Part shown: positions 26,682 through 64,000 of the stretch, in pieces
How positions within the stretch are numbered: the first letter of the stretch is position 1
How the letters are laid out: each line of letters starts with the position of its first letter
Source of the DNA: Azolla caroliniana
Lineage: Eukaryota > Plantae > Polypodiophyta
Direction of reading: 5' to 3'
Length of the DNA stretch: 64,000 nucleotides
Assembly (NCBI GenBank): GCA_043228905.1
Contig: JBHGNT010000049.1
Span: 119,105-183,104 of the forward strand
Translations under genes and position numbers: made by a program
The notes under the pieces: generated by a model
The model's database searches: none
Seen by the model: the letters and a program-made list of their open reading frames with translations, nothing else
Told to the model about the DNA's origin: nothing

Positions 26682-29600
26682 TGTTGAGAATCAAACTCAA
26701 CTTCCCGTGTGTGGGAACACACTCTAGGATACTCAAGTGTGTGACCACCCCACCTCCTTGTATAGTAACTAGTGTGTCATAGAAGTTAATATCCTATGAC
26801 ACATTCTTTAAGTAGTTAAGACCCGACCTCTTTCCCAAGAGGTGACTCTTGTGAGAGAACCTAGAGAGAAGGTGACTACATAAGCACCTTCTCCTTCTCT
26901 TTGTAGTAGTTGGCTCAATCTTGCTCCTTGTTAATACAATTTTTCTGTTTTTCTGTAACTCTTGAGTTCTCTCTCACTCACTCACTCTCTCTCCACACAT
27001 ACACACACACCCCTTCCAATGCACAAAATCATCATCGATTCTTTACATGGTATTAGAGCGCTTAGTAGCTTGATCCAAGCCCATCGCCTTTACGTGTGTT
27101 GTGCCCAAGCCCACGCTCGGAAAGAATTGATTGATCGTTTTAGCAACAATCTACACAGTTCATATCAAAGAGAAGAAGAAGCTCGACATGAACACTCAGA
27201 TGGGAAGCACTCTTCCTACCAATAGAAACAACTTTGCATCTTGGGAGTACAAGATCCACCAATACCTTGTCGGCCAAGGCTATTGGAGTTATGTCGAAGG
27301 AGCAAACGAAAATCAACCCAACCCAACACATGCCAACTACCCAGCTTGGGAGCAAGCAGTGAGTCGTGTGTTGTACTGCCTTGCATCATGTGTCCATGAT
27401 CACATGCTTGGCTACATCTGAGAGGCCAAAACGCCGAAGTTGGCATGGGGGAACCTCAAGAAGATCTTCACAGCCAACACGATCGCAAGAAAGCTTCAAC
27501 TCCGTCAAGAGTTGAACGATATACAATAGAGGGACATGTCAATCGACAACTACACCTTGATGATCAAGGAACTATGCGATGACCTCGGGTCGATCAATGT
27601 TAGCATTGACGATGATGAAGTGGTGCAGATTTGCCTCGGAGGCTTAACACCTCGGTTCGGAGCCATTTTGTTGGTAGTCCTCGTGAGGGAGAATCCTCCC
27701 TCCGTCAATCCCCAATCGATGCTATTGGTCGAGGAGAATCATGTTCGAACAAAAAGCAATGCGCAAGAAGGACACTTGCGCTATTCGAACTTCAATGGAG
27801 GAAGAGGACAAGGTCGTGGAAGAAAGGTTGATTCAACCAAGGCCGACACAACCAAGAGCAACCCTGAGAACATAACTTCTACTACCGACAAGATGTTTCG
27901 AACGCGCGAGGTGGAGCGTCCGGAAGAAGGGGGAGCAATCATGCCGAACCGAGCTGACAAAACAATTCCACCCAGTGTAGATATTGTGGTAAATTCGGTC
28001 ACTATGAGGCAGAGTGTCGGAAAAAAAAGAGTGAGTTCGCCTCCACAAGCCGACAACTCACCAACTACACCTCAAACTCCAACTACGACAATCGTGGTGG
28101 AATGTTGATGATGTGACACAGAGCGAATTCGATGACGACATCATGTCTGACAGCCACCTCCAACTCGGAAAATGTATGGTTTGTCAATTCGGGTGTATCC
28201 AATCACATGACATCTCATGAAGATTGGTTTCGAGAGCTACGAAAGCCTGAACGGGAATCATACCTACATTCGGCATGTGGAAACTAGGGATGACACAATT
28301 CACCCCATTTGGCATGTCGGAAATGTCCCGTTCGGCAAAGAAGGGAATCTGACCTACATCAAGAACGTCTTGCATGTTCCAACTATAACAAAGAACCTGG
28401 TCTCGGTCGGTTAGATCGTGGAACAAGGCATGCAAGTTCAATTCAACGATAGTGGCTGCTTCATCAAAAAGGAAGGCCGAATTATTGCTCGCAATCGAAG
28501 AGAAGACCAAATGTTCATTCTCAATTCTCACGAGATGAAATTGACAATGTATGCCAAGGGCCGAAAGGCCGACACTGACGTAGAGTTGTGGCACAAACGA
28601 ATTGGCCCCATTAACCTCCAAAAGCTCAAAGGAATGCAATCGAAAGGAGTCTTCATCAGACTTCCGGCTTTTACCGAAAAGGAGAGTACAAGCGCATGTG
28701 AAGGCTACCAGTTCAACAAACAACATCGTCAACCATTCCCGAAAGAGAGGAACGTGAGCAAAGGGATCCTGGATGTAATACATTCAAATGTGTGGGGACC
28801 AGCCCAAACAACAACATTTAGTGGTTGCCAATATTATGTGATGTTCATCGACAATTTCTCGAGGCGTATACCTGGATCTACCCCATGTCCCAGAAGAGTG
28901 AAGTGTTCTCGCACTTCCAGAAATTCAAGAACAAAGTCGAAAAGGAAACCAATCGTCATGTACGATGCCTTCAATTGGACGGGGGCAAAGAGTACTTCTC
29001 CGACGCCTTTACAACATACCTTCGACAAGAGGAAATCCAGCAAGACTTTACATGCCAACACACAACTCAGCATAACGGAGTAGTTGAACACAAGAACCAG
29101 CACATACTCGAGGTGGCAAGGGCAATGATAGACGAGAAACATATTGGGTTGAAGCGGCAAATACGGCCTTTATCTGATGAATCGTTGCACAACATCAGGA
29201 GTACACGATCTTACCCCCCATGAGAGGTTCTATGAAAAGAAACTGGATCTATCCCACGTCAGGATATTCGGTTCAATAGCACATGTATATATTCCCGACG
29301 AGAAGCGGCAGAAGCTTAATCCCAAGACGGAGAAATGTATACTCGTAGGGTACTCACTTGAGCAAAAAGGGTATAAGTGCTTCAACCCTTCCACCAAGAA
29401 GGTACGAGTGAGTAGGGATGTCGTATTCGACGAGTCGGCATCCTGGTATATAGTCGAATCAGCCCCATCCGACACAGTCGAAACCGAGTTTGACACATGC
29501 GGATGAGGATGATCGATCGAGTTTCACATCAGAGGAAAGTCCAATCTCAACCAGGTTGAGTAGACCACAAGAGCCTCCGAGCAACCAAAGCACGTCGCGG

Positions 29601-38231: not shown

Positions 38232-38939
38232 ATGGAGAGCTCTCATAGTGAGATCACACCCGCATCTATGAGAAACATCAAAAAACATGAACCTAACAAT
38301 GTTCTAGAAGAATGGAATCAAAATTTCCGGGAATTAGATGCCAACGGCGACGGGAAGATCTCAGTTGAAGAAGTCCGAAGAGTTGTGATGGTCCTAATGA
38401 AAAATACCGGTGGCAATATTGTAAGTGATGGTTGGCATGAAGCCGCAGAGATGGTCTCAGAAGCCGATCAAGACGGTGATGGATACATTGATTTGGAAGA
38501 ATTCATTGAGTTGAATCGACGCATGTCCATAGACAATGGTCGCTCGCGAATTTTAACTACAAATAGTGTTGATCATGTTGATGAAAAGTTTGATGCAAAT
38601 CATGCACAAGGCAAATATATTGTTGACCGAAGTGACATGACCTCCGAGGATGATAAGGTCCTTGCTGATGCATTCGAGGTGTTCGATACAAATCGTGATG
38701 GGCGTATCACTGCGGAGGAGCTCCATGCGGTACTAGTTGAGCTAGGTGGTATTGGTGAAGGACCAAAGACTTTTGGTGCCATGGGTACTACTTCAACATC
38801 AACATCCACATCATCTGGTTCTACTAACACAACATCGATGCAAGAATGTCGTCGTATGATCCGTGCAGTGGATCGGAAGGGGGATGGCTATGTTGACTTC
38901 CACGACTTCAAACGCATGATGTCCATGATCATGCCATGA
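38232..38939 (+). CDS. Calmodulin-like (CML) EF-hand protein, intronless, 235 aa
   Basis: Four EF-hand loops: DANGDGKISVEE, DQDGDGYIDLEE, DTNRDGRITAEE, DRKGDGYVDFHD. First ATG at 38232; TATA-like sequence at ~38070-38097. Confidence 0.9.
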   Translation: MESSHSEITPASMRNIKKHEPNNVLEEWNQNFRELDANGDGKISVEEVRRVVMVLMKNTGGNIVSDGWHEAAEMVSEADQDGDGYIDLEEFIELNRRMSIDNGRSRILTTNSVDHVDEKFDANHAQGKYIVDRSDMTSEDDKVLADAFEVFDTNRDGRITAEELHAVLVELGGIGEGPKTFGAMGTTSTSTSTSSGSTNTTSMQECRRMIRAVDRKGDGYVDFHDFKRMMSMIMP

Positions 38940-46591: not shown

Positions 46592-48531
46592 TCAAACTGA
46601 CTTCTTTGTTGATTTTGAAGCCTTCTTCCTTCCTCCAGATTTTGCAACACGGAGACTCTTGTGCACAGTACTTAGTTTTGCTAGTGCAGCTTTCTTTAAA
46701 TCGGGACGGTAGCCATTAGCAACCACCTGTGAAAACAATTTTAAAAAAAAGTTTAGAACAAGAACCACAGACTGGAATAACTTGTGATCATAAATTCCTT
46801 AACAAGTGTATTGAAGCAATGACCAAATAATCAAAACTACAAATAAAAACACATTCACACTTATATGAGGTTCATTTGAAACAACAAGGAGTTTCTGCAA
46901 ACACTACCAATATGAACAAATTACTTTCAAATCTCAAATTGACACAGAACAGAGGAAAATCCAAATACCCCAACACATTCGCGGAAGTCAAGAAAACATG
47001 CAGAATCCTAACAATGTAGGGTCATCATCTGCATTGCCACTACATTTGGAAACATGGCGTTGACTTTCATAAATCAATACTACCAGGATGAACTACAAAT
47101 TGCAACTTTAAATTGCAATATAATAAACAAAAGTTCATAAACATCATCTCATTTATTTCAAAAGAATATGAGTAAAATTAAACACACCAAAAAATCACAA
47201 CTATTTGAACCAGTTTACCATACCACATAAAGAACAAATAATTTGCAATTTCCTAGATTTAGAAATGATCATAGCCAGTAACTTATCTATGGAATTCTCA
47301 ATATAGAGGAATATACATTAAGACAACTACATAGGGTCTTGTACGAAAATTTATGTGCTGCACCATAGCACTGAAACATAGAGCAGATCCTAATTTGGAT
47401 CTATAAACTTCAAAACCAAGAATATAAAAGAAAATTTTCTTTTAAATCCGTTAAATTAGGTGGCATACTCTTACCTGATTCTCTACAACTATCGCCATTC
47501 GTCTGACGTCCCTCTTCAAAAGGCATCTATTGATTGAATTCTTCGGTTTATTCGATTTCTTTGTCTTTGTTGTAGCAAGGTAAACAGTGAGATCACTGCC
47601 AGGAGTAATAGATACAGTCTTCTTGTTTGCCAATCCTGTGACCAGATTGAAATTTCACACAACAATTAAGATCATACATCAATTTCTAGCCTTACAAAGG
47701 TTTTTAGATCACATTGGAGAACATAGGAATCTCAGATAAAAATGTAGAAAGTACTCTATAATTCAGATGTAAAAGATATATACCAAACATTATGTAATCA
47801 TTGTATAAAAATATTTGATGCTCTTCTCTTAAAATATACTAATTACAAAATCGTATAACAGTTTAACATTACAATCCTGATTGCACACTAATTTTATACT
47901 TTGTAAAAAAAGTAACTTTACACCTAGTTTTAGATTTGGAGAATATATCAAATTTTCACATCAGTTAATATTGCATAAACTGCACAAATGTCAAACTTTA
48001 TGTAAAAAAAATTGAAGCTTGCCATAACAAACAAAAAATTCATATAGCATAAGCCAATGTCACATATAAATAGAAAGTGATAACAAAGAATACTGTCAAA
48101 TGCGATCTAAATTCAAACCATGTGAAACGTTTCACATAAAGTTACAAAGCATACAGTTACTGAAATCTTGTTAACAAAGACATAGAATAATGTCAAGATA
48201 TTCTTAAAACCCTGTCAGACGTTGTACATAAGGTTCCAAAACATAAAGTTACTGAAACCTTGGAATCAAAAACATAGAGGAATGTCATTATATTCAAATA
48301 AACACACCGATTTTCGTCTATACGAGAAGTTCAGCGAAAAATACAAAAACGCTTTCGCAAAATGATATTAAATAGGAGAATACCAGAGTACTTGAAGGAG
48401 TTGAGGTTATATAGGTTATTAGGCTCACTGCTGAACTGCATCGAAGAACTGCCATTACCATTCCTCTTAACAAGGAATTTGTTGTTCTTCTTCACCAGCT
48501 GCCATAGCAGATCAGGAGAAACTCCAGCCAT
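46592..48531 (-). CDS. RPL28: 60S ribosomal protein L28 (eL28); exons 48531-48384, 47635-47475, 46726-46592 (147 aa)
   Basis: [22 protein letters not shown]...[18 protein letters not shown]|LANKKTV...NQ|[19 protein letters not shown]; GT-AG introns in phase. Confidence 0.95.
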
Positions 48532-49196: not shown

Positions 49197-50066
49197 AGAA
49201 TTGTCCCTAACATTTGTTTCCATTCTTTCCCCTCAACAATCATCATTACACTCTAACCGCAGAGATCAAGCACGTTTAGATTGTAATATGTTATGCTAGT
49301 GGTCGGTCTAACTTACAAAACCTATAGTGGGTTTATATCTCGTCAATTTGTTATAATCCCGAGGATCAAGAGAGTGGCGACATACCATATTAGCTCGCTA
49401 GGAAACCGTCTTCCTCACCTTGGCGCGTCGAGGCCTTGTGTCACCCGTTGGACTCGGGTCGCCGCTTGTATGGTTGCACCAAACTGGGAAGATGATCGAC
49501 GGTAGTTTCACACCAGTTTCCGTTCCCTTCCGGGAACCCTCAAACGCTACACGGTACGTGCCACAAACCTCGGGAAGCGACCCCCCCTCGAAACTAGGTC
49601 ATACGGCCTCCAGCCCGATGACGTGCGGACGTGGAAGGTTTGTCGACTAGCAAACAACCCGAGCCTTGCAGCATTCCGAGAACGTTGTCATTCGTTACAG
49701 CGAGGACCTTCTTGTTTCTTCTCCGTTGACGTTGCATTGGAAAGGAAAGGAGAACAAGAGAACGCATTTCAACCGTTTTGTTTTGATCAGGGGTTGTTGG
49801 TGCGCGTCATTTGGCTCACGCTAAATCTCAAAGGCTGCAGCTAGAGTTTTGACGATGTTAAAAGGTGGTTACGTATCCCACCGATCTATGGCTTTGTTCG
49901 GTAAAACCTGCAAGGCGAGACGATGTTGCCAGGATGTTTGGCCGGGAAGACGAGTCCGCAACCTTGGATGGATTGGTAGATGGAGGGTAAATTGCACCCA
50001 CATTGTCAATGGTAAGTTCTAACGTGTTGCATTGAACGTCGTGCCGTAATGACTCCCGTTGAAAGC

Positions 50067-50531
50067 AAAAGAAAGACGTGAAAGAGAGCATCAAGCCTGA
50101 TGCGCGGTTGCGGGGAATGTTGCAGCGTGGTTGGAATTCTCAATTGCGGTTTCCGTCCAAGGTGCTCATACGTACAACCGTAATGCGTGGTCTTCCTCTG
50201 CGTTATTCCAGGTGACACGAGTCTCGAGTAAGCGTCGGCCATTCCCAAGAACTTGAACCGCAGATTTGACCAGTAAGCGAGCAGATACCTATTACATCCG
50301 ACTTTGACGTGATCGCCAAATGTATTCGGAAGCCCCAAGTAAGGCACCGTCATGGCAGTTACTTCGCAGGCTCATTCCTCTTAACCTTCCACACGTGCGC
50401 GGTTAGCAATCCCTAAAGAACTCCTCGAACGAAGCTCGGGCGGTAACGTCTTGAATAAGGACCCACGCAAGGAGGCGAGGGGGACAAGATCGTAGCGGTG
50501 GTTTTGACGTACAACTAATTCAACCGCGCGG
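50067..50531 (-). ncRNA. Candidate ~460-nt Pol III trailer RNA co-transcribed with tRNA-iMet (repeated in every unit); identity unknown
   Basis: No T4 until 50067-50070; complementary ends (50521-50529 with 50102-50110); terminal hairpin 50088-50103 before a pyrimidine/T tract. Hypothesis only. Confidence 0.3.
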
Positions 50532-50603
50532 TATCAGAGCGAGGTTTCGATCCTCGGACCTGTGGGTTATGGGCCCACCACGCTTCCGCTGCGCCACTCT
50601 GAT
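50532..50603 (-). tRNA. tRNA-iMet: Initiator tRNA-Met (CAT), copy 1
   Basis: ATCAGAGTGGCGCAGCGGAAGCGTGGTGGGCCCATAACCCACAGGTCCGAGGATCGAAACCTCGCTCTGATA: A1:U72, three G:C pairs in the anticodon stem, A54/A60 T-loop, 72 nt. Confidence 0.97.
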
Positions 50604-52071
50604 GCGGATGACTTGAAAGCCAAAGAGAGATAAAGAATTCAAAGAGAACGACGCGAGAGCTCTTCCTTATTTCTCCATGTTAATCTACTCGAGAAGCCAT
50701 GGAAACGTTGTAAACAAGGTCGAGGTTAGCAAATGGAGCGTGAACAACCCGAGCATGAGCACGGCGGGTGGCCCAGTTAAGTAGTACGGATGTTCCTACC
50801 TACTCGGCGCACGTCAATGTGTCTGCCTCGTTCGTTCTTGCTACGGACTTGGAGCGGGAGAACACCCTCTTGTGGGCAACGCGAGAGAGAGGGCGACCTG
50901 ATTATTCTTGAGCATGGCGACATACCATATTAGCTCGCTAGGAAACCGTCTTCCTCACCTTGGCGCGTCGAGGCCTTGTGTCACCCGTTGGACTCGGGTC
51001 GCCGCTTGTATGGTTGCACCAAACTGGGAAGATGATCGACGGTAGTTTCACACCAGTTTCCGTTCCCTTCCGGGAACCCTCAAACGCTACACGGTACGTG
51101 CCACAAACCTCGGGAAGCGACCCCCCCTCGAAACTAGGTCATACGGCCTCCAGCCCGATGACGTGCGGACGTGGAAGGTTTGTCGACTAGCAAACAACCC
51201 GAGCCTTGCAGCATTCCGAGAACGTTGTCATTCGTTACAGCGAGGACCTTCTTGTTTCTTCTCCGTTGACGTTGCATTGGAAAGGAAAGGAGAACAAGAG
51301 AACGCATTTCAACCGTTTTGTTTTGATCAGGGGTTGTTGGTGCGCGTCATTTGGCTCACGCTAAATCTCAAAGGTTGCAGCTAGAGTTTTGACGATGTTA
51401 AAAGGTGGTTACGTATCCCACCGATCTATGGCTTTGTTCGGTAAAACCTGCAAGGCGAGACGATGTTGCCAGGATGTTTGGCCGGGAAGACGAGTCCGCA
51501 ACCTTGGATGGATTGGTAGATGGAGGGTAAATTGCACCCACATTGTCAATGGTAAGTTCTAACGTGTTGCATTGAACGTCGTGCCGTAATGACTCCCGTT
51601 GAAAGCAAAAGAAAGACGTGAAAGAGAGCATCAAGCCTGATGCGCGGTTGCGGGGAATGTTGCAGCGTGGTTGGAATTCTCAATTGCGGTTTCCGTCCAA
51701 GGTGCTCATACGTACAACCGTAATGCGTGGTCTTCCTCTGCGTTATTCCAGGTGACACGAGTCTCGAGTAAGCGTCGGCCATTCCCAAGAACTTGAACCG
51801 CAGATTTGACCAGTAAGCGAGCAGATACCTATTACATCCGACTTTGACGTGATCGCCAAATGTATTCGGAAGCCCCAAGTAAGGCACCGTCATGGCAGTT
51901 ACTTCGCAGGCTCATTCCTCTTAACCTTCCAGACGTGCGCGGTTAGCAATCCCTAAAGAACTCCTCGAACGAAGCTCGGGCGGTAACGTCTTGAATAAGG
52001 ACCCACGCAAGGAGGCGAGGGGGACAAGATCGTAGCGGTGGTTTTGACGTACAACTAATTCAACCGCGCGG

Positions 52072-52143
52072 TATCAGAGCGAGGTTTCGATCCTCGGACC
52101 TGTGGGTTATGGGCCCACCACGCTTCCGCTGCGCCACTCTGAT
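52072..52143 (-). tRNA. tRNA-iMet: Initiator tRNA-Met (CAT), copy 2
   Basis: Identical to copy 1. Confidence 0.97.
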
Positions 52144-53612
52144 GCGGATGACTTGAAAGCCAAAGAGAGATAAAGAATTCAAAGAGAACGACGCGAGAGC
52201 TCTTCCTTATTTCTCCATGTTAATCTACTCGAGAAGCCATGGAAACGTTGTAAACAAGGTCGAGGTTAGCAAATGGAGCGTGAACAACCCGAGCATGAGC
52301 ACGGCGGGTGGCCCAGTTAAGTAGTATGGATGTTCCTACCTACTCGGCGCACGTCAATGTGTCTGCCTCGTTCGTTCTTGCTACGGACTTGGAGCGGGAG
52401 AACACCCTCTTGTGGGCAACGCGAGAGAGAGGGCGACCTGATTATTCTTGAGCATGGCGACATACCATATTAGCTCGCTAGGAAACCGTCTTCCTCACCT
52501 TGGCGCGTCGAGGCCTTTGTGTCACCCGTTGGACTCGGGTCGCCGCTTGTATGGTTGCACCAAACTGGGAAGATGATCGACGGTAGTTTCACACCAGTTT
52601 CCGTTCCCTTCCGGGAACCCTCAAACGCTACACGGTACGTGCCACAAACCTCGGGAAGCGACCCCCCCTCGAAACTAGGTCATACGGCCTCCAGCCCGAT
52701 GACGTGCGGACGTGGAAGGTTTGTCGACTAGCAAACAACCCGAGCCTTGCAGCATTCCGAGAACGTTGTCATTCGTTACAGCGAGGACCTTCTTGTTTCT
52801 TCTCCGTTGACGTTGCATTGGAAAGGAAAGGAGAACAAGAGAACGCATTTCAACCGTTTTGTTTTGATCAGGGGTTGTTGGTGCGCGTCATTTGGCTCAC
52901 GCTAAATCTCAAAGGTTGCAGCTAGAGTTTTGACGATGTTAAAAGGTGGTTACGTATCCCACCGATCTATGGCTTTGTTCGGTAAAACCTGCAAGGCGAG
53001 ACGATGTTGCCAGGATGTTTGGCCGGGAAGACGAGTCCGCAACCTTGGATGGATTGGTAGATGGAGGGTAAATTGCACCCACATTGTCAATGGTAAGTTC
53101 TAACGTGTTGCATTGAACGTCGTGCCGTAATGACTCCCGTTGAAAGCAAAAGAAAGACGTGAAAGAGAGCATCAAGCCTGATGCGCGGTTGCGGGGAATG
53201 TTGCAGCGTGGTTGGAATTCTCAATTGCGGTTTCCGTCCAAGGTGCTCATACGTACAACCGTAATGCGTGGTCTTCCTCTGCGTTATTCCAGGTGACACG
53301 AGTCTCGAGTAAGCGTCGGCCATTCCCAAGAACTTGAACCGCAGATTTGACCAGTAAGCGAGCAGATACCTATTACATCCGACTTTGACGTGATCGCCAA
53401 ATGTATTCGGAAGCCCCAAGTAAGGCACCGTCATGGCAGTTACTTCGCAGGCTCATTCCTCTTAACCTTCCACACGTGCGCGGTTAGCAATCCCTAAAGA
53501 ACTCCTCGAACGAAGCTCGGGCGGTAACGTCTTGAATAAGGACCCACGCAAGGAGGCGAGGGGGACAAGATCGTAGCGGTGGTTTTGACGTACAACTAAT
53601 TCAACCGCGCGG

Positions 53613-53684
53613 TATCAGAGCGAGGTTTCGATCCTCGGACCTGTGGGTTATGGGCCCACCACGCTTCCGCTGCGCCACTCTGAT
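53613..53684 (-). tRNA. tRNA-iMet: Initiator tRNA-Met (CAT), copy 3
   Basis: Identical to copy 1. Confidence 0.97.
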
Positions 53685-55153
53685 GCGGATGACTTGAAAG
53701 CCAAAGAGAGATAAAGAATTCAAAGAGAACGACGCGAGAGCTCTTCCTTATTTCTCCATGTTAATCTACTCGAGAAGCCATGGAAACGTTGTAAACAAGG
53801 TCGAGGTTAGCAAATGGAGCGTGAACAACCCGAGCATGAGCACGGCGGGTGGCCCAGTTAAGTAGTATGGATGTTCCTACCTACTCGGCGCACGTCAATG
53901 TGTCTGCCTCGTTCGTTCTTGCTACGGACTTGGAGCGGGAGAACACCCTCTTGTGGGCAACGCGAGAGAGAGGGCGACCTGATTATTCTTGAGCATGGCG
54001 ACATACCATATTAGCTCGCTAGGAAACCGTCTTCCTCACCTTGGCGCGTCGAGGCCTTGGTGTCACCCGTTGGACTCGGGTCGCCGCTTGTATGGTTGCA
54101 CCAAACTGGGAAGATGATCGACGGTAGTTTCACACCAGTTTCCGTTCCCTTCCGGGAACCCTCAAACGCTACACGGTACGTGCCACAAACCTCGGGAAGC
54201 GACCCCCCCTCGAAACTAGGTCATACGGCCTCCAGCCCGATGACGTGCGGACGTGGAAGGTTTGTCGACTAGCAAACAACCCGAGCCTTGCAGCATTCCG
54301 AGAACGTTGTCATTCGTTACAGCGAGGACCTTCTTGTTTCTTCTCCGTTGACGTTGCATTGGAAAGGAAAGGAGAACAAGAGAACGCATTTCAACCGTTT
54401 TGTTTTGATCAGGGGTTGTTGGTGCGCGTCATTTGGCTCACGCTAAATCTCAAAGGCTGCAGCTAGAGTTTTGACGATGTTAAAAGGTGGTTACGTATCC
54501 CACCGATCTATGGCTTTGTTCGGTAAAACCTGCAAGGCGAGACGATGTTGCCAGGATGTTTGGCCGGGAAGACGAGTCCGCAACCTTGGATGGATTGGTA
54601 GATGGAGGGTAAATTGCACCCACATTGTCAATGGTAAGTTCTAACGTGTTGCATTGAACGTCGTGCCGTAATGACTCCCGTTGAAAGCAAAAGAAAGACG
54701 TGAAAGAGAGCATCAAGCCTGATGCGCGGTTGCGGGGAATGTTGCAGCGTGGTTGGAATTCTCAATTGCGGTTTCCGTCCAAGGTGCTCATACGTACAAC
54801 CGTAATGCGTGGTCTTCCTCTGCGTTATTCCAGGTGACACGAGTCTCGAGTAAGCGTCGGCCATTCCCAAGAACTTGAACCGCAGATTTGACCAGTAAGC
54901 GAGCAGATACCTATTACATCCGACTTTGACGTGATCGCCAAATGTATTCGGAAGCCCCAAGTAAGGCACCGTCATGGCAGTTACTTCGCAGGCTCATTCC
55001 TCTTAACCTTCCACACGTGCGCGGTTAGCAATCCCTAAAGAACTCCTCGAACGAAGCTCGGGCGGTAACGTCTTGAATAAGGACCCACGCAAGGAGGCGA
55101 GGGGGACAAGATCGTAGCGGTGGTTTTGACGTACAACTAATTCAACCGCGCGG

Positions 55154-55225
55154 TATCAGAGCGAGGTTTCGATCCTCGGACCTGTGGGTTATGGGCCCAC
55201 CACGCTTCCGCTGCGCCACTCTGAT
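55154..55225 (-). tRNA. tRNA-iMet: Initiator tRNA-Met (CAT), copy 4
   Basis: Identical to copy 1. Confidence 0.97.
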
Positions 55226-56694
55226 GCGGATGACTTGAAAGCCAAAGAGAGATAAAGAATTCAAAGAGAACGACGCGAGAGCTCTTCCTTATTTCTCCAT
55301 GTTAATCTACTCGAGAAGCCATGGAAACGTTGTAAACAAGGTCGAGGTTAGCAAATGGAGCGTGAACAACCCGAGCATGAGCACGGCGGGTGGCCCAGTT
55401 AAGTAGTATGGATGTTCCTACCTACTCGGCGCACGTCAATGTGTCTGCCTCGTTCGTTCTTGCTACGGACTTGGAGCGGGAGAACACCCTCTTGTGGGCA
55501 ACGCGAGAGAGAGGGCGACCTGATTATTCTTGAGCATGGCGACATACCATATTAGCTCGCTAGGAAACCGTCTTCCTCACCTTGGCGCGTCGAGGCCTTT
55601 GTGTCACCCGTTGGACTCGGGTCGCCGCTTGTATGGTTGCACCAAACTGGGAAGATGATCGACGGTAGTTTCACACCAGTTTCCGTTCCCTTCCGGGAAC
55701 CCTCAAACGCTACACGGTACGTGCCACAAACCTCGGGAAGCGACCCCCCCTCGAAACTAGGTCATACGGCCTCCAGCCCGATGACGTGCGGACGTGGAAG
55801 GTTTGTCGACTAGCAAACAACCCGAGCCTTGCAGCATTCCGAGAACGTTGTCATTCGTTACAGCGAGGACCTTCTTGTTTCTTCTCCGTTGACGTTGCAT
55901 TGGAAAGGAAAGGAGAACAAGAGAACGCATTTCAACCGTTTTGTTTTGATCAGGGGTTGTTGGTGCGCGTCATTTGGCTCACGCTAAATCTCAAAGGCTG
56001 CAGCTAGAGTTTTGACGATGTTAAAAGGTGGTTACGTATCCCACCGATCTATGGCTTTGTTCGGTAAAACCTGCAAGGCGAGACGATGTTGCCAGGATGT
56101 TTGGCCGGGAAGACGAGTCCGCAACCTTGGATGGATTGGTAGATGGAGGGTAAATTGCACCCACATTGTCAATGGTAAGTTCTAACGTGTTGCATTGAAC
56201 GTCGTGCCGTAATGACTCCCGTTGAAAGCAAAAGAAAGACGTGAAAGAGAGCATCAAGCCTGATGCGCGGTTGCGGGGAATGTTGCAGCGTGGTTGGAAT
56301 TCTCAATTGCGGTTTCCGTCCAAGGTGCTCATACGTACAACCGTAATGCGTGGTCTTCCTCTGCGTTATTCCAGGTGACACGAGTCTCGAGTAAGCGTCG
56401 GCCATTCCCAAGAACTTGAACCGCAGATTTGACCAGTAAGCGAGCAGATACCTATTACATCCGACTTTGACGTGATCGCCAAATGTATTCGGAAGCCCCA
56501 AGTAAGGCACCGTCATGGCAGTTACTTCGCAGGCTCATTCCTCTTAACCTTCCACACGTGCGCGGTTAGCAATCCCTAAAGAACTCCTCGAACGAAGCTC
56601 GGGCGGTAACGTCTTGAATAAGGACCCACGCAAGGAGGCGAGGGGGACAAGATCGTAGCGGTGGTTTTGACGTACAACTAATTCAACCGCGCGG

Positions 56695-56766
56695 TATCAG
56701 AGCGAGGTTTCGATCCTCGGACCTGTGGGTTATGGGCCCACCACGCTTCCGCTGCGCCACTCTGAT
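56695..56766 (-). tRNA. tRNA-iMet: Initiator tRNA-Met (CAT), copy 5
   Basis: Identical to copy 1. Confidence 0.97.
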
Positions 56767-58235
56767 GCGGATGACTTGAAAGCCAAAGAGAGATAAAGAA
56801 TTCAAAGAGAACGACGCGAGAGCTCTTCCTTATTTCTCCATGTTAATCTACTCGAGAAGCCATGGAAACGTTGTAAACAAGGTCGAGGTTAGCAAATGGA
56901 GCGTGAACAACCCGAGCATGAGCACGGCGGGTGGCCCAGTTAAGTAGTATGGATGTTCCTACCTACTCGGCGCACGTCAATGTGTCTGCCTCGTTCGTTC
57001 TTGCTACGGACTTGGAGCGGGAGAACACCCTCTTGTGGGCAACGCGAGAGAGAGGGCGACCTGATTATTCTTGAGCATGGCGACATACCATATTAGCTCG
57101 CTAGGAAACCGTCTTCCTCACCTTGGCGCGTCGAGGCCTTTGTGTCACCCGTTGGACTCGGGTCGCCGCTTGTATGGTTGCACCAAACTGGGAAGATGAT
57201 CGACGGTAGTTTCACACCAGTTTCCGTTCCCTTCCGGGAACCCTCAAACGCTACACGGTACGTGCCACAAACCTCGGGAAGCGACCCCCCCTCGAAACTA
57301 GGTCATACGGCCTCCAGCCCGATGACGTGCGGACGTGGAAGGTTTGTCGACTAGCAAACAACCCGAGCCTTGCAGCATTCCGAGAACGTTGTCATTCGTT
57401 ACAGCGAGGACCTTCTTGTTTCTTCTCCGTTGACGTTGCATTGGAAAGGAAAGGAGAACAAGAGAACGCATTTCAACCGTTTTGTTTTGATCAGGGGTTG
57501 TTGGTGCGCGTCATTTGGCTCACGCTAAATCTCAAAGGCTGCAGCTAGAGTTTTGACGATGTTAAAAGGTGGTTACGTATCCCACCGATCTATGGCTTTG
57601 TTCGGTAAAACCTGCAAGGCGAGACGATGTTGCCAGGATGTTTGGCCGGGAAGACGAGTCCGCAACCTTGGATGGATTGGTAGATGGAGGGTAAATTGCA
57701 CCCACATTGTCAATGGTAAGTTCTAACGTGTTGCATTGAACGTCGTGCCGTAATGACTCCCGTTGAAAGCAAAAGAAAGACGTGAAAGAGAGCATCAAGC
57801 CTGATGCGCGGTTGCGGGGAATGTTGCAGCGTGGTTGGAATTCTCAATTGCGGTTTCCGTCCAAGGTGCTCATACGTACAACCGTAATGCGTGGTCTTCC
57901 TCTGCGTTATTCCAGGTGACACGAGTCTCGAGTAAGCGTCGGCCATTCCCAAGAACTTGAACCGCAGATTTGACCAGAATCCCAACAGATACCTATTATA
58001 TCCGACTTTGACGTGATCGCCAAATGTATTCGGAAGCCCCAAGTAAGGCACCGTCATGGCAGTTACTTCGCAGGCTCATTCCTCTTAACCTTCCACACGT
58101 GCGCGGTTAGCAATCCCTAAAGAACTCCTCGAACGAAGCTCGGGCGGTAACGTCTTGAATAAGGACCCACGCAAGGAGGCGAGGGGGACAAGATCGTAGC
58201 GGTGGTTTTGACGTACAACTAATTCAACCGCGCGG

Positions 58236-58307
58236 TATCAGAGCGAGGTTTCGATCCTCGGACCTGTGGGTTATGGGCCCACCACGCTTCCGCTGCGCCA
58301 CTCTGAT
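58236..58307 (-). tRNA. tRNA-iMet: Initiator tRNA-Met (CAT), copy 6
   Basis: Identical to copy 1. Confidence 0.97.
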
Positions 58308-59776
58308 GCGGATGACTTGAAAGCCAAAGAGAGATAAAGAATTCAAAGAGAACGACGCGAGAGCTCTTCCTTATTTCTCCATGTTAATCTACTCGAGAAG
58401 CCATGGAAACGTTGTAAACAAGGTCGAGGTTAGCAAATGGAGCGTGAACAACCCGAGCATGAGCACGGCGGGTGGCCCAGTTAAGTAGTATGGATGTTCC
58501 TACCTACTCGGCGCACGTCAATGTGTCTGCCTCGTTCGTTCTTGCTACGGACTTGGAGCGGGAGAACACCCTCTTGTGGGCAACGCGAGAGAGAGGGCGA
58601 CCTGATTATTCTTGAGCATGGCGACATACCATATTAGCTCGCTAGGAAACCGTCTTCCTCACCTTGGCGCGTCGAGGCCTTTGTGTCACCCGTTGGACTC
58701 GGGTCGCCGCTTGTATGGTTGCACCAAACTGGGAAGATGATCGACGGTAGTTTCACACCAGTTTCCGTTCCCTTCCGGGAACCCTCAAACGCTACACGGT
58801 ACGTGCCACAAACCTCGGGAAGCGACCCCCCCTCGAAACTAGGTCATACGGCCTCCAGCCCGATGACGTGCGGACGTGGAAGGTTTGTCGACTAGCAAAC
58901 AACCCGAGCCTTGCAGCATTCCGAGAACGTTGTCATTCGTTACAGCGAGGACCTTCTTGTTTCTTCTCCGTTGACGTTGCATTGGAAAGGAAAGGAGAAC
59001 AAGAGAACGCATTTCAACCGTTTTGTTTTGATCAGGGGTTGTTGGTGCGCGTCATTTGGCTCACGCTAAATCTCAAAGGCTGCAGCTAGAGTTTTGACGA
59101 TGTTAAAAGGTGGTTACGTATCCCACCGATCTATGGCTTTGTTCGGTAAAACCTGCAAGGCGAGACGATGTTGCCAGGATGTTTGGCCGGGAAGACGAGT
59201 CCGCAACCTTGGATGGATTGGTAGATGGAGGGTAAATTGCACCCACATTGTCAATGGTAAGTTCTAACGTGTTGCATTGAACGTCGTGCCGTAATGACTC
59301 CCGTTGAAAGCAAAAGAAAGACGTGAAAGAGAGCATCAAGCCTGATGCGCGGTTGCGGGGAATGTTGCAGCGTGGTTGGAATTCTCAATTGCGGTTTCCG
59401 TCCAAGGTGCTCATACGTACAACCGTAATGCGTGGTCTTCCTCTGCGTTATTCCAGGTGACACGAGTCTCGAGTAAGCGTCGGCCATTCCCAAGAACTTG
59501 AACCGCAGATTTGACCAGTAAGCGAGCAGATACCTATTACATCCGACTTTGACGTGATCGCCAAATGTATTCGGAAGCCCCAAGTAAGGCACCGTCATGG
59601 CAGTTACTTCGCAGGCTCATTCCTCTTAACCTTCCACACGTGCGCGGTTAGCAATCCCTAAAGAACTCCTCGAACGAAGCTCGGGCGGTAACGTCTTGAA
59701 TAAGGACCCACGCAAGGAGGCGAGGGGGACAAGATCGTAGCGGTGGTTTTGACGTACAACTAATTCAACCGCGCGG

Positions 59777-59848
59777 TATCAGAGCGAGGTTTCGATCCTC
59801 GGACCTGTGGGTTATGGGCCCACCACGCTTCCGCTGCGCCACTCTGAT
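59777..59848 (-). tRNA. tRNA-iMet: Initiator tRNA-Met (CAT), copy 7
   Basis: Identical to copy 1. Confidence 0.97.
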
Positions 59849-61316
59849 GCGGATGACTTGAAAGCCAAAGAGAGATAAAGAATTCAAAGAGAACGACGCG
59901 AGAGCTCTTCCTTATTTCTCCATGTTAATCTACTCGAGAAGCCATGGAAACGTTGTAAACAAGGTCGAGGTTAGCAAATGGAGCGTGAACAACCCGAGCA
60001 TGAGCACGGCGGGTGGCCCAGTTAAGTAGTATGGATGTTCCTACCTACTCGGCGCACGTCAATGTGTCTGCCTCGTTCGTTCTTGCTACGGACTTGGAGC
60101 GGGAGAACACCCTCTTGTGTGCAACGCGAGAGAGAGGGCGACCTGATTATTCTTGAGCATGGCGACATACCATATTAGCTCGCTAGGAAACCGTCTTCCT
60201 CACCTTGGCGCGTCGAGGCCTTGTGTCACCCGTTGGACTCGGGTCGCCGCTTGTATGGTTGCACCAAACTGGGAAGATGATCGACGGTAGTTTCACACCA
60301 GTTTCCGTTCCCTTCCGGGAACCCTCAAACGCTACACGGTACGTGCCACAAACCTCGGGAAGCGACCCCCCCTCGAAACTAGGTCATACGGCCTCCAGCC
60401 CGATGACGTGCGGACGTGGAAGGTTTGTCGACTAGCAAACAACCCGAGCCTTGCAGCATTCCGAGAACGTTGTCATTCGTTACAGCGAGGACCTTCTTGT
60501 TTCTTCTCCGTTGACGTTGCATTGGAAAGGAAAGGAGAACAAGAGAACGCATTTCAACCGTTTTGTTTTGATCAGGGGTTGTTGGTGCGCGTCATTTGGC
60601 TCACGCTAAATCTCAAAGGCTGCAGCTAGAGTTTTGACGATGTTAAAAGGTGGTTACGTATCCCACCGATCTATGGCTTTGTTCGGTAAAACCTGCAAGG
60701 CGAGACGATGTTGCCAGGATGTTTGGCCGGGAAGACGAGTCCGCAACCTTGGATGGATTGGTAGATGGAGGGTAAATTGCACCCACATTGTCAATGGTAA
60801 GTTCTAACGTGTTGCATTGAACGTCGTGCCGTAATGACTCCCGTTGAAAGCAAAAGAAAGACGTGAAAGAGAGCATCAAGCCTGATGCGCGGTTGCGGGG
60901 AATGTTGCAGCGTGGTTGGAATTCTCAATTGCGGTTTCCGTCCAAGGTGCTCATACGTACAACCGTAATGCGTGGTCTTCCTCTGCGTTATTCCAGGTGA
61001 CACGAGTCTCGAGTAAGCGTCGGCCATTCCCAAGAACTTGAACCGCAGATTTGACCAGTAAGCGAGCAGATACCTATTACATCCGACTTTGACGTGATCG
61101 CCAAATGTATTCGGAAGCCCCAAGTAAGGCACCGTCATGGCAGTTACTTCGCAGGCTCATTCCTCTTAACCTTCCACACGTGCGCGGTTAGCAATCCCTA
61201 AAGAACTCCTCGAACGAAGCTCGGGCGGTAACGTCTTGAATAAGGACCCACGCAAGGAGGCGAGGGGGACAAGATCGTAGCGGTGGTTTTGACGTACAAC
61301 TAATTCAACCGCGCGG

Positions 61317-61388
61317 TATCAGAGCGAGGTTTCGATCCTCGGACCTGTGGGTTATGGGCCCACCACGCTTCCGCTGCGCCACTCTGAT
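61317..61388 (-). tRNA. tRNA-iMet: Initiator tRNA-Met (CAT), copy 8
   Basis: Identical to copy 1. Confidence 0.97.
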
Positions 61389-62857
61389 GCGGATGACTTG
61401 AAAGCCAAAGAGAGATAAAGAATTCAAAGAGAACGACGCGAGAGCTCTTCCTTATTTCTCCATGTTAATCTACTCGAGAAGCCATGGAAACGTTGTAAAC
61501 AAGGTCGAGGTTAGCAAATGGAGCGTGAACAACCCGAGCATGAGCACGGCGGGTGGCCCAGTTAAGTAGTATGGATGTTCCTACCTACTCGGCGCACGTC
61601 AATGTGTCTGCCTCGTTCGTTCTTGCTACGGACTTGGAGCGGGAGAACACCCTCTTGTGGGCAACGCGAGAGAGAGGGCGACCTGATTATTCTTGAGCAT
61701 GGCGACATACCATATTAGCTCGCTAGGAAACCGTCTTCCTCACCTTGGCGCGTCGAGGCCTTTGTGTCACCCGTTGGACTCGGGTCGCCGCTTGTATGGT
61801 TGCACCAAACTGGGAAGATGATCGACGGTAGTTTCACACCAGTTTCCGTTCCCTTCCGGGAACCCTCAAACGCTACACGGTACGTGCCACAAACCTCGGG
61901 AAGCGACCCCCCCTCGAAACTAGGTCATACGGCCTCCAGCCCGATGACGTGCGGACGTGGAAGGTTTGTCGACTAGCAAACAACCCGAGCCTTGCAGCAT
62001 TCCGAGAACGTTGTCATTCGTTACAGCGAGGACCTTCTTGTTTCTTCTCCGTTGACGTTGCATTGGAAAGGAAAGGAGAACAAGAGAACGCATTTCAACC
62101 GTTTTGTTTTGATCAGGGGTTGTTGGTGCGCGTCATTTGGCTCACGCTAAATCTCAAAGGCTGCAGCTAGAGTTTTGACGATGTTAAAAGGTGGTTACGT
62201 ATCCCACCGATCTATGGCTTTGTTCGGTAAAACCTGCAAGGCGAGACGATGTTGCCAGGATGTTTGGCCGGGAAGACGAGTCCGCAACCTTGGATGGATT
62301 GGTAGATGGAGGGTAAATTGCACCAACATTGTCAATGGTAAGTTCTAACGTGTTGCATTGAACGTCGTGCCGTAATGACTCCCGTTGAAAGCAAAAGAAA
62401 GACGTGAAAGAGAGCATCAAGCCTGATGCGCGGTTGCGGGGAATGTTGCAGCGTGGTTGGAATTCTCAATTGCGGTTTCCGTCCAAGGTGCTCATACGTA
62501 CAACCGTAATGCGTGGTCTTCCTCTGCGTTATTCCAGGTGACACGAGTCTCGAGTAAGCGTCGGCCATTCCCAAGAACTTGAACCGCAGATTTGACCAGT
62601 AAGCGAGCAGATACCTATTACATCCGACTTTGACGTGATCGCCAAATGTATTCGGAAGCCCCAAGTAAGGCACCGTCATGGCAGTTACTTCGCAGGCTCA
62701 TTCCTCTTAACCTTCCACACGTGCGCGGTTAGCAATCCCTAAAGAACTCCTCGAACGAAGCTCGGGCGGTAACGTCTTGAATAAGGACCCACGCAAGGAG
62801 GCGAGGGGGACAAGATCGTAGCGGTGGTTTTGACGTACAACTAATTCAACCGCGCGG

Positions 62858-62929
62858 TATCAGAGCGAGGTTTCGATCCTCGGACCTGTGGGTTATGGGC
62901 CCACCACGCTTCCGCTGCGCCACTCTGAT
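62858..62929 (-). tRNA. tRNA-iMet: Initiator tRNA-Met (CAT), copy 9
   Basis: Identical to copy 1. Confidence 0.97.
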
Positions 62930-64000
62930 GCGGATGACTTGAAAGCCAAAGAGAGATAAAGAATTCAAAGAGAACGACGCGAGAGCTCTTCCTTATTTCT
63001 CCATGTTAATCTACTCGAGAAGCCATGGAAACGTTGTAAACAAGGTCGAGGTTAGCAAATGGAGCGTGAACAACCCGAGCATGAGCACGGCGGGTGGCCC
63101 AGTTAAGTAGTATGGATGTTCCTACCTACTCGGCGCACGTCAATGTGTCTGCCTCGTTCGTTCTTGCTACGGACTTGGAGCGGGAGAACACCCTCTTGTG
63201 GGCAACGCGAGAGAGAGGGCGACCTGATTATTCTTGAGCATGGCGACATACCATATTAGCTCGCTAGGAAACCGTCTTCCTCACCTTGGCGCGTCGAGGC
63301 CTTTGTGTCACCCGTTGGACTCGGGTCGCCGCTTGTATGGTTGCACCAAACTGGGAAGATGATCGACGGTAGTTTCACACCAGTTTCCGTTCCCTTCCGG
63401 GAACCCTCAAACGCTACACGGTACGTGCCACAAACCTCGGGAAGCGACCCCCCCTCGAAACTAGGTCATACGGCCTCCAGCCCGATGACGTGCGGACGTG
63501 GAAGGTTTGTCGACTAGCAAACAACCCGAGCCTTGCAGCATTCCGAGAACGTTGTCATTCGTTACAGCGAGGACCTTCTTGTTTCTTCTCCGTTGACGTT
63601 GCATTGGAAAGGAAAGGAGAACAAGAGAACGCATTTCAACCGTTTTGTTTTGATCAGGGGTTGTTGGTGCGCGTCATTTGGCTCACGCTAAATCTCAAAG
63701 GCTGCAGCTAGAGTTTTGACGATGTTAAAAGGTGGTTACGTATCCCACCGATCTATGGCTTTGTTCGGTAAAACCTGCAAGGCGAGACGATGTTGCCAGG
63801 ATGTTTGGCCGGGAAGACGAGTCCGCAACCTTGGATGGATTGGTAGATGGAGGGTAAATTGCACCCACATTGTCAATGGTAAGTTCTAACGTGTTGCATT
63901 GAACGTCGTGCCGTAATGACTCCCGTTGAAAGCAAAAGAAAGACGTGAAAGAGAGCATCAAGCCTGATGCGCGGTTGCGGGGAATGTTGCAGCGTGGTTG

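What the first reader, a model, noticed from the sequence alone, without database searches (positions are those of the whole stretch)
49375..64000. rDNA-like homogenised tandem array of initiator tRNA-Met genes (1.54-kb unit, at least 9 copies)
Seen: 9 full units and a partial one, differing at only a few sites. Each full unit has exactly one intact tRNA-iMet(CAT) with plausible plant upstream signals (CAA at about -11, TTTAT at about -30). The spacer is GC- and CpG-rich, unlike the AT-rich flanks. Known: plant tRNA genes are mostly dispersed; tandem clusters exist (e.g. Arabidopsis Tyr/Ser and Pro), but I do not know of a large initiator-tRNA array. Inference: a recent amplification or concertedly evolving locus that could raise initiator-tRNA dosage, supply retrotransposon primer, or act as a Pol III/TFIIIC chromatin domain or tRNA-based satellite.
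Basis: partly seen in the sequence, partly recalled or inferred. Interest (0 to 1): 0.85.

Follow-up and report, generated by a model that had tools for sequence, protein, structure and literature searches.

The report
Tandem initiator tRNA gene array, fern
A fern chromosome carries at least nine near-identical head-to-tail copies of a 1.54-kb unit, each holding one intact initiator methionine tRNA gene. Related ferns have the same array with a diverged spacer but an unchanged tRNA, so it is an old, homogenised tRNA gene cluster, of a tRNA type I found in no paper on plant clusters.

Summary
Window 49376-64000 holds 9 full units of 1540/1541 bp and one unit cut by the window end. The units differ at 13 alignment columns. 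Each full unit has one intact cytosolic initiator tRNA-Met gene on the minus strand.

New here: homologous arrays occur in ENA metagenome assemblies that carry fern DNA (L011, L126).
- Spacers are about 81% identical to this one.
- Every tRNA base recovered is identical.
- L011 repeats with a period of about 1503 bp.
So the array is old, evolves in concert, and the tRNA is under purifying selection.

The spacer has no conserved ORF, no second Rfam RNA and no notable fold. Its CpG observed/expected ratio is 1.14-1.24 in all lineages against 0.53 in the flank, and CpG sites change no faster than other G/C sites. This argues against long-term CpG methylation.

One oddity: the first TTTT lies about 460 nt downstream. 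In 95 other plant iMet genes it lies 0-55 nt downstream.

This scan had already found other tRNA arrays in this genome (Asp, Trp, Arg, Val, Tyr, Gln), most of those followed up decaying. None was an iMet array. Verdict: a new member of the known plant tRNA gene clusters, of moderate interest.

The parts
49376..64000 (-). Tandem array of 9 full units (1540/1541 bp) and one 759-bp unit cut by the window end. The tRNA sense is the minus strand.
   Evidence: spacing of 1540/1541 bp and 13 variable columns; no other copy of the unit in window 1-49375.
50532..50603 (-). Initiator tRNA-Met gene, unit 1
   Evidence: Rfam tRNA, 54.1 bits; gathering score 29
52072..52143 (-). Initiator tRNA-Met gene, unit 2
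53613..53684 (-). Initiator tRNA-Met gene, unit 3 (the reference unit for all coordinates given relative to tRNA +1)
55154..55225 (-). Initiator tRNA-Met gene, unit 4
56695..56766 (-). Initiator tRNA-Met gene, unit 5
58236..58307 (-). Initiator tRNA-Met gene, unit 6
59777..59848 (-). Initiator tRNA-Met gene, unit 7
61317..61388 (-). Initiator tRNA-Met gene, unit 8
62858..62929 (-). Initiator tRNA-Met gene, unit 9
53685..53720 (-). Upstream region of the unit-3 tRNA, with TTTAT at -31..-27 and CAA at -12..-10. These are candidate Pol III upstream elements and recur in every unit.
   Evidence: A TTTAT element also lies upstream in L011, but this is the least conserved part of the unit (58% identity).
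53151..53612 (-). Trailer of about 460 nt without any TTTT. It ends at the first T4 run, 534 nt from tRNA +1.
   Evidence: T runs. (fold z-score +0.35); conserved less well than the rest of the spacer, and half of it is deleted in variant L011B.
57978..57999 (+). Cluster of six substitutions private to unit 6
   Evidence: The variant bases do not match the L011 states.
49360..49390 (.). Left junction between unique AT-rich DNA and the first unit

Best explanation
This is a genuine nuclear tandem array of initiator tRNA-Met genes in a fern, with one gene per 1.54-kb unit. It starts about 850 bp upstream of a ribosomal protein L28e gene and points the same way.

Shown:
- The array family predates the split from at least two related lineages, and at least one of them also has it in tandem.
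- Within this array, unequal crossing-over or gene conversion keeps units at least 99.4% identical, while spacers between lineages have drifted to about 81% identity. This is concerted evolution.
- The 72-nt tRNA is the only part that is fully conserved.

Inferred:
- Selection acts on the tRNA, so the array has served as a working source of initiator tRNA for most of its history.
- Because there is no TTTT for about 460 nt, termination must be non-canonical or must occur at the conserved T run at +534. That would give a long 3' trailer, which RNase Z would remove.
- The CpG-rich spacer shows no sign of methyl-CpG decay. This fits a locus that is unmethylated in the germline, hence potentially active, rather than silenced.
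For: Structure.

Initiator identity: A1:U72, three G:C pairs at 29-31:39-41, and A54 and A60. The sequence is identical to plant iMet genes found 126 times in metagenome contigs. The G50:C64 form seen here occurs in 17 non-redundant genes elsewhere; all 17 have a T run within 37 nt.

Homologous arrays:
- L011 has a period of about 1503 bp and a spacer 80.7-81.4% identical, with the tRNA 72/72 identical.
- L126 is 82% identical, with 54/54 tRNA bases identical.
- L011B is a deletion variant.
- At spacer identity 0.814, the chance of 72 unchanged bases is about 4e-7 (my arithmetic).

Spacer:
- It diverges at least as fast as single-copy intergenic DNA between this species and a relative (about 10% mismatches there), so it is not constrained.
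- CpG observed/expected is 1.14-1.24 in all four variants, against 0.53 in the flank.
- CpG sites diverge by 0.30 and other G/C sites by 0.33.

Setting: the array is gene-adjacent. The neighbour matches Pfam Ribosomal_L28e on two exons.

Copy number: the related array contigs have SPAdes coverage 17.7 and 3.7, while single-copy host contigs in sister assemblies have 1.2-1.5. This hints at many copies.
Against: The first TTTT lies about 460 nt downstream, whereas 95 other plant iMet genes have one 0-55 nt downstream, median 24. Four T residues are taken as the minimum for Pol III termination (PMC13437025).

Clustered tRNA genes in Arabidopsis are silent and methylated (PMC7544208). Most of the other tRNA arrays followed up in this genome are decaying (earlier notes).

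The CAA at -12..-10 lies just outside the -10 to -3 zone typical of angiosperms.

tRNA conservation could also come from gene conversion by dispersed functional copies. Plant rDNA keeps many CpGs although it is methylated (my knowledge), so the CpG argument is indirect.

I do not know how many iMet genes lie outside the array.
Confidence: 0.6

Rival explanations
1. It is a surplus, epigenetically silenced tRNA gene cluster, like the Arabidopsis Ser-Tyr-Tyr and Pro clusters. The array is real and homogenised but contributes little or no initiator tRNA in normal tissues. At most it is reactivated in special cell types.
For: Arabidopsis clusters are silent, methylated and carry repressive chromatin (PMC7544208). 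The Ser-Tyr-Tyr cluster is reactivated only in specific cell types (cited in PMC13437025). The missing proximal T4 would impair termination and re-initiation. This genome holds many tRNA arrays that behave like satellites.
Against: All 9 tRNAs are intact. The tRNA is unchanged across lineages whose spacers differ by about 19%. There is no CpG depletion or CpG hypermutability in any lineage. The array sits next to a housekeeping gene.
Confidence: 0.27
2. It is a dicistronic tRNA-ncRNA cassette. The terminator-less tRNA drives Pol III transcription of a functional RNA of about 460 nt, which RNase Z releases, as in plant tRNA-snoRNA genes.
For: There is no TTTT until +534. A T run at that place is present in the fern, L011A and L126. 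Note s1-501110 raised this reading.
Against: Rfam finds nothing but the tRNA, even at E up to 1. The trailer folds no better than shuffled sequence (z +0.35). By eye from the 50-column identity table, the trailer is less conserved than the rest of the spacer. L011A and L126 carry TTTT 14 nt after the tRNA, which would stop transcription before the trailer. L011B lacks about 570 bp, including half of the trailer. I saw no TGATGA C-box in the unit (read).
Confidence: 0.06
3. It is an assembly artefact: one or a few units wrongly expanded into an array.
For: Near-identical repeats are error-prone in assemblies. No read evidence could be obtained.
Against: Units carry private and shared variants in a non-random pattern. 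An independent SPAdes contig from another sample (L011) also spans a unit junction with a period of about 1503 bp, at raised coverage.
Confidence: 0.04

Closest known systems
Arabidopsis thaliana Ser-Tyr-Tyr tRNA gene cluster on chromosome 1 (PMC7544208; PMC13437025)
   Same: It is a head-to-tail tandem repeat of a whole unit, all genes in one orientation and regularly spaced (27 units over about 40 kb, so about 1.5 kb each). Flanks are strongly conserved among units, which fits segmental duplication of complete units.
   Different: The Arabidopsis unit has three genes (Ser, Tyr, Tyr) against one iMet gene here. Its genes have short poly(T) terminators; these have none for about 460 nt. It lies near pericentromeric DNA and is methylated and silent. 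Here the array is next to a ribosomal protein gene and shows no CpG decay; its methylation was not measured.
Single-isotype plant tRNA clusters: Pro in dicots, Gln in barley and rice, Ile and Ala in maize, Ile/Cys in Ceratodon (PMC13437025; PMC12652284)
   Same: These are lineage-specific tandem amplifications of one tRNA isotype with uniform flanks.
   Different: They are compact, and were defined as at least 5 genes in 5 kb or as pairs closer than 1 kb. This array has one gene per 1.54 kb and would escape both definitions. Initiator tRNA appears in those papers only among identical tandem pairs, with 1-34 copies per genome and no described array.
Xenopus laevis 3.18-kb tandem tDNA repeat, which includes initiator tRNA-Met genes (from my own knowledge; not checked with a tool)
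   Same: Initiator tRNA genes sit inside a highly repeated, homogenised tandem unit.
   Different: It is a vertebrate unit with eight genes of mixed isotypes, and I recall it as having normal terminators.
5S rDNA arrays
   Same: A small Pol III gene plus a non-transcribed spacer is repeated in tandem. The gene is conserved while the spacer diverges between species under concerted evolution.
   Different: The gene, the promoter type and the unit size differ. 5S genes end in a T run.
Other tRNA arrays of this same genome: Asp, Trp, Gln, Val, Tyr, Arg (earlier notes s1-497264, s1-510617 and others)
   Same: Same genome, and the same tendency to amplify tRNA-bearing units.
   Different: The Asp and Trp arrays that were followed up have short units (about 190-380 bp) and mostly broken tRNA copies. 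Here the unit is 1.54 kb, all nine copies are intact, and the tRNA is conserved across lineages.

Membership tests
Eukaryotic cytosolic initiator tRNA-Met gene | Cloverleaf tRNA with a CAT anticodon | tested here: met
   ARAGORN. Rfam tRNA at 54.1 bits, above the gathering score of 29.
Eukaryotic cytosolic initiator tRNA-Met gene | Initiator marks: an A1:U72 pair, three G:C pairs at 29-31:39-41, and A54 and A60 in the T loop | tested here: met
   Read directly from the Rfam alignment. These marks are the established initiator identity set (my knowledge).
Eukaryotic cytosolic initiator tRNA-Met gene | Same sequence as accepted plant initiator genes | tested here: met
   The sequence is identical to plant iMet genes except for the compensated 50:64 pair. 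The G50:C64 form occurs in 17 non-redundant genes elsewhere, all with a T run within 37 nt. The C50:G64 form is listed as iMet in the PMC12652284 supplement.
Eukaryotic cytosolic initiator tRNA-Met gene | Transcribed, processed and aminoacylated | not testable with these tools
Canonical plant Pol III tRNA transcription unit | A run of at least four T shortly downstream | tested here: not met
   The first TTTT lies about 460 nt after the tRNA. In 95 reference iMet genes it lies 0-55 nt downstream.
Canonical plant Pol III tRNA transcription unit | An upstream A/T-rich element and a CAA motif | tested here: inconclusive
   TTTAT lies at -31..-27 and CAA at -12..-10. The CAA is just outside the -10 to -3 zone of angiosperms, and these motifs are weaker in non-angiosperms (PMC13437025).
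Plant tandem tRNA gene cluster | Repeated units in one orientation, each with a tRNA gene | tested here: met
Plant tandem tRNA gene cluster | Published density criterion: at least 5 genes within 5 kb (PMC13437025), or neighbours closer than 1 kb (PMC12652284) | tested here: not met
   There is one gene per 1.54 kb, so 3 to 4 genes per 5 kb.
Plant tandem tRNA gene cluster | Silent and DNA-methylated, as in Arabidopsis | not testable with these tools
   Only indirect evidence: there is no CpG depletion or CpG hypermutability.
Concertedly evolving multigene array (rDNA or 5S type) | Units much more alike within an array than between lineages | tested here: met
   Identity is at least 99.4% within the array and about 81% to L011A, L126 and L011B.
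Concertedly evolving multigene array (rDNA or 5S type) | Tandem arrangement in the other lineage too | tested here: met
   L011 has a period of about 1503 bp. L126 is too short to show a junction.
Dicistronic tRNA-snoRNA/ncRNA gene | A conserved, structured second RNA between the tRNA and the terminator | tested here: not met
Decaying tRNA-derived satellite | Most tRNA copies mutated | tested here: not met
   All nine copies are identical and intact.

The most novel reading that the evidence does not exclude
In this fern lineage the initiator tRNA is supplied mainly by one rDNA-like locus. The locus would be a long-lived, concertedly evolving, unmethylated CpG-rich Pol III array. Its genes lack a proximal terminator and would be made as precursors with 3' trailers hundreds of nucleotides long. 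That would be a way of organising and expressing initiator tRNA genes not described for land plants.
Probability: 0.2. Interest if true: 0.6.

Novelty: new member of a known kind. Interest (0 to 1): 0.45.

Why it matters
Initiator tRNA level limits translation initiation. In the plants surveyed so far its genes number 1-34 and are treated as dispersed.

A conserved, homogenised array of intact iMet genes would be a distinct way to set initiator dosage. It offers a natural case for asking whether clustered plant tRNA genes are always silenced. It also lets one test how Pol III copes with genes that have no T4 terminator.

The array also shows that the current cluster definitions (5 genes in 5 kb, or neighbours within 1 kb) miss arrays with kilobase spacers. 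Surveys of fern tRNA repertoires may therefore misclassify such loci as dispersed genes.

If the array proves to be silent, it is simply one more tRNA-bearing repeat in a genome that has many.

Tried and rejected
No depth, long-read, RNA or methylation evidence was obtained.
- Second RNA in the unit: Rfam at gathering score and at E up to 1 gave only the tRNA. The trailer fold was no better than shuffles.
- Protein coding in the spacer: the ORFs (up to 115 aa) are broken by frameshifting indels in L011. The 115-aa ORF has no homologue.
- Exact look-ups: unit ORFs and the neighbouring calmodulin-like gene were not on record.
- Other copies: there is no other copy of the unit in window 1-49375. 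A conserved 30-mer of the spacer has no match in bacterial/archaeal genomes or viral contigs.
- Unit-6 variant cluster: I tested whether it is a conversion tract from an L011-like array. The bases do not match.
- Retrotransposon primer-binding sites: I used them as a read-out of which iMet form is used. Four sites match the tRNA 3' end, but only the first 12 nt are constrained. Base 13 is G, G, A and T, which is uninformative.
- LTR-retrotransposon read-through origin: rejected, because no LTR-like features flank the tRNA.
- Synteny in Ceratopteris or Adiantum: not possible. The neighbouring calmodulin-like gene has only 35-37% identical relatives there.


Full report
**1. Observation**

ARAGORN and Rfam each report nine tRNA-Met(CAT) genes on the minus strand of the window, 1540 or 1541 bp apart, and nothing else at Rfam gathering scores in the 64 kb. 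Direct-repeat search and anchoring on the unit start give nine full units from 49376 to 63241 and a tenth, 759-bp unit that the window end cuts off. The array is therefore at least 14.6 kb, and its right end is unknown.

A MAFFT alignment of the units shows 13 variable columns:
- a one-base T indel shared by units 1, 2 and 8;
- one substitution shared by units 2 and 3;
- a few singletons;
- a cluster of six substitutions within 22 bp that is private to unit 6.

The unit has 52% G+C and CpG observed/expected 1.14. The flank has 35% and 0.53. The one point it did not state is that the genes lie on the minus strand.

**2. The tRNA**

The 72-nt gene has the marks of a eukaryotic cytosolic initiator: A1:U72, G29-G31 paired with C39-C41, and A54 and A60 (read; the identity set is established knowledge).

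It is identical to the plant iMet sequence listed in the supplement of PMC12652284, except for a compensated swap of the 50:64 pair, which is G:C here and C:G in seed plants.

A scan of metagenome contigs with both forms allowed gave 120 loci with 126 genes: 106 C:G and 20 G:C. The G:C form is thus a normal isoform in other plant-like contigs. All 17 non-redundant G:C genes have a T run within 37 nt.

From my own knowledge, purine 64 of plant and fungal initiators carries a ribosyl-phosphate modification, and a C at 64 could not. I did not test this.

**3. Surroundings**

- The left flank is genic. A ribosomal protein L28e gene lies on the minus strand, with its start codon at 48531 and two exons matching Pfam Ribosomal_L28e. 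The array ends about 850 bp upstream of it and points the same way.
- Further left are an EF-hand calmodulin-like gene (38232-38936), a cathepsin-propeptide fragment and Copia-type retrotransposon remains.
- The organism is a fern according to earlier follow-ups of this genome. The best named hits to the calmodulin-like protein are also from ferns, though only at 35-37% identity.
- An ENA metagenome contig (L125, assembly ERZ1034437) is 99.6% identical to the window over 1.1 kb. That sample series therefore contains this species, or one very close to it.
- Another contig (L121, ERZ1034397) is a relative. Its coding DNA is 92.7% identical, with about 10% mismatches in the intergenic flanks.

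**4. Relatives of the array**

One metagenome locus, L011 (ERZ1034411, 2097 bp, SPAdes coverage 17.7), aligns with the whole unit and not only with the tRNA.
- It is itself tandem, with a period of about 1503 bp.
- A global alignment of one unit from each gives 1134 identical of 1405 ungapped spacer positions (80.7%).
- The tRNA is 72/72 identical.
- At that spacer identity, the chance of 72 unchanged bases is about 4e-7.

L011 also holds part of a second unit subtype, L011B, which is 87% identical to the first and has a deletion of about 570 bp.

A protein search with a spurious ORF of L011 found a third contig, L126 (ERZ1034405, coverage 3.7). It is 93% identical to L011A and 82% to the fern, and the 54 tRNA bases it contains are unchanged.

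The pattern is high identity within an array, about 19% divergence between lineages, and an invariant gene. That is the signature of concerted evolution with purifying selection on the tRNA.

The spacer diverges at least as fast as ordinary intergenic DNA between this species and its relative. The spacer itself therefore does not look constrained. I cannot say whether L011 and L126 come from that same relative, from more distant species, or from paralogous arrays.

**5. The spacer**

- It holds no second Rfam family, even at E up to 1.
- It has no conserved ORF. Indels that are not multiples of three break the ORFs between lineages, and the longest ORF has no homologue.
- No copy of it lies elsewhere in the window.

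What is conserved is its composition. CpG observed/expected is 1.14, 1.24, 1.16 and 1.15 in the four variants, although their G+C ranges from 45% to 52%. CpG positions have diverged no faster than other G/C positions (0.30 against 0.33). The flank shows that this genome does lose CpGs elsewhere. I read this as indirect evidence that the array has not been CpG-methylated in the germline over that time. Biased gene conversion in an array could give a similar picture.

**6. Transcription signals**

Upstream there is TTTAT at -31..-27 and CAA at -12..-10. L011 has a TTTAT a few bases further away, and the upstream 50 nt are otherwise the least conserved part of the unit.

Downstream there is no TTTT until position 534 from tRNA +1, about 460 nt after the gene. 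In 95 non-redundant plant iMet genes from the metagenome loci, the first TTTT lies 0-55 nt downstream, with a median of 24. This array is an extreme outlier.

L011A and L126 do have TTTT 14 nt after the tRNA, created by a three-base GTT insertion. L011B lacks it, like the fern. The T4-less state is thus shared by two diverged variants and may be the older one. It has coexisted with a perfectly conserved tRNA.

PMC13437025 reports that non-angiosperm land plants have the lowest share of tRNA genes with T4 within 25 nt. Weak or non-canonical termination may therefore be more tolerated in ferns.

A T run at about +534 is present in the fern, L011A and L126.

**7. Mechanism**

The best-supported account is a working, or until recently working, Pol III gene array, homogenised by unequal exchange. 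Selection acts only on the tRNA. Termination is either non-canonical near the gene or occurs at the +534 T run, followed by RNase Z cleavage.

Shown:
- the structure of the array;
- its homogeneity;
- cross-lineage homology;
- invariance of the tRNA;
- the CpG pattern;
- the absence of a proximal T4.

Inferred:
- transcription of the genes;
- the termination site;
- the methylation state;
- the contribution to the cellular initiator pool.

The main rival is a silenced surplus cluster of the Arabidopsis kind (PMC7544208). I rate it lower because of the conserved tRNA and the lack of CpG decay, but nothing here excludes present-day silence.

The dicistronic tRNA-ncRNA idea of note s1-501110 is not supported:
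- the trailer folds no better than shuffles;
- by eye from the 50-column identity table, it is less conserved than the rest of the spacer;
- two variants place a terminator before it;
- it is half deleted in a third variant.

An assembly artefact is unlikely. The units carry distinct variants, and an independent assembly shows the same tandem junction at raised coverage. That coverage comparison is only suggestive, because the single-copy contigs come from sister samples.

**8. Comparison with what is known**

Tandem tRNA gene clusters are known in plants: Ser-Tyr-Tyr, Pro and Cys in Arabidopsis; Gln in barley and rice; Ile and Ala in maize; Ile/Cys in Ceratodon (PMC7544208, PMC13437025, PMC12652284, PMC13578239).

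In those papers iMet has 1-34 copies per genome and appears only among identical tandem pairs. I found no described iMet array, and a search for such a report returned nothing relevant.

The published cluster criteria (at least 5 genes in 5 kb, or neighbours under 1 kb) would not flag this array. The fern Azolla is noted for more than 7500 tRNA genes (PMC13437025, PMC13578239), and this scan has already met Asp, Trp, Arg, Val, Tyr and Gln arrays in this genome, most of those followed up decaying.

The present array differs from them in three ways: its long spacer, its fully intact genes, and its demonstrated conservation across lineages. From memory, the Xenopus 3.18-kb tDNA repeat is the classic tandem unit that contains initiator tRNA genes.

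**9. Verdict**

The finding is real and cleanly described. It is a new member of a known kind (plant tandem tRNA gene clusters), with a new isotype and three unusual traits:
- a spacer that has kept its CpGs in all four diverged variants;
- no proximal terminator;
- evidence of selection on the tRNA.

Interest is moderate. It would rise if the array proves to be the main active iMet locus.

**Limits**
- The species names behind the ENA assemblies were not resolved.

Noticed in passing
L001-L120 (metagenome loci with plant iMet genes): In at least 54 of 95 non-redundant plant iMet genes, the 3' trailer holds a conserved motif (AGAG, a few bases, then GCTTCC or GCTTTC) between the tRNA and the T run. 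GGCTTCCG is complementary to the tRNA's own D-loop, CGGAAGC. The fern array, L011 and L126 lack the motif. It may be a conserved pre-tRNA-iMet trailer element.
   Followed up: partly
window 50530-50531 and the same place in every unit; also L011: The two bases after the discriminator A are CC in the fern, L011A and L011B, so two thirds of a CCA end is encoded. Among the genes listed, only L011 shares this. It could hint at a retro-copied founder, or it could be chance.
   Followed up: no
window 46594-48531 (minus strand): A ribosomal protein L28e gene with introns starts about 850 bp from the array's left end and is co-oriented with the tRNA genes. Its promoter region abuts the array.
   Followed up: partly
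window 17112-18291: A 106-bp minisatellite with 11 copies about 91% alike, and a higher-order period of 316 bp. The open reading frame across it looks spurious.
   Followed up: no
window 1825-1836(-), 5933-5944(-), 14922-14933(+), 27048-27059(+): Four retrotransposon primer-binding sites are complementary to the 3' end of initiator tRNA-Met. Three of them directly follow a TTTACA LTR end.
   Followed up: partly
L125 (ERZ1034437), L121/L122 (ERZ1034397, ERZ1034381), L011 (ERZ1034411), L126 (ERZ1034405): A series of ENA metagenome assemblies carries low-coverage DNA of this fern (99.6% identity) and of related ferns. They could serve as a source of comparative sequence for other findings in this genome.
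   Followed up: partly
window 48115-48295: Two copies of a 92-bp repeat (79% matches) lie in an intron of the L28e gene (exon 2 ends near 47645, exon 1 starts near 48400).
   Followed up: no
window 57978-57999: Unit 6 carries six substitutions within 22 bp, while the rest of the unit is identical to its neighbours. This is a multi-nucleotide mutation or a local assembly error.
   Followed up: partly
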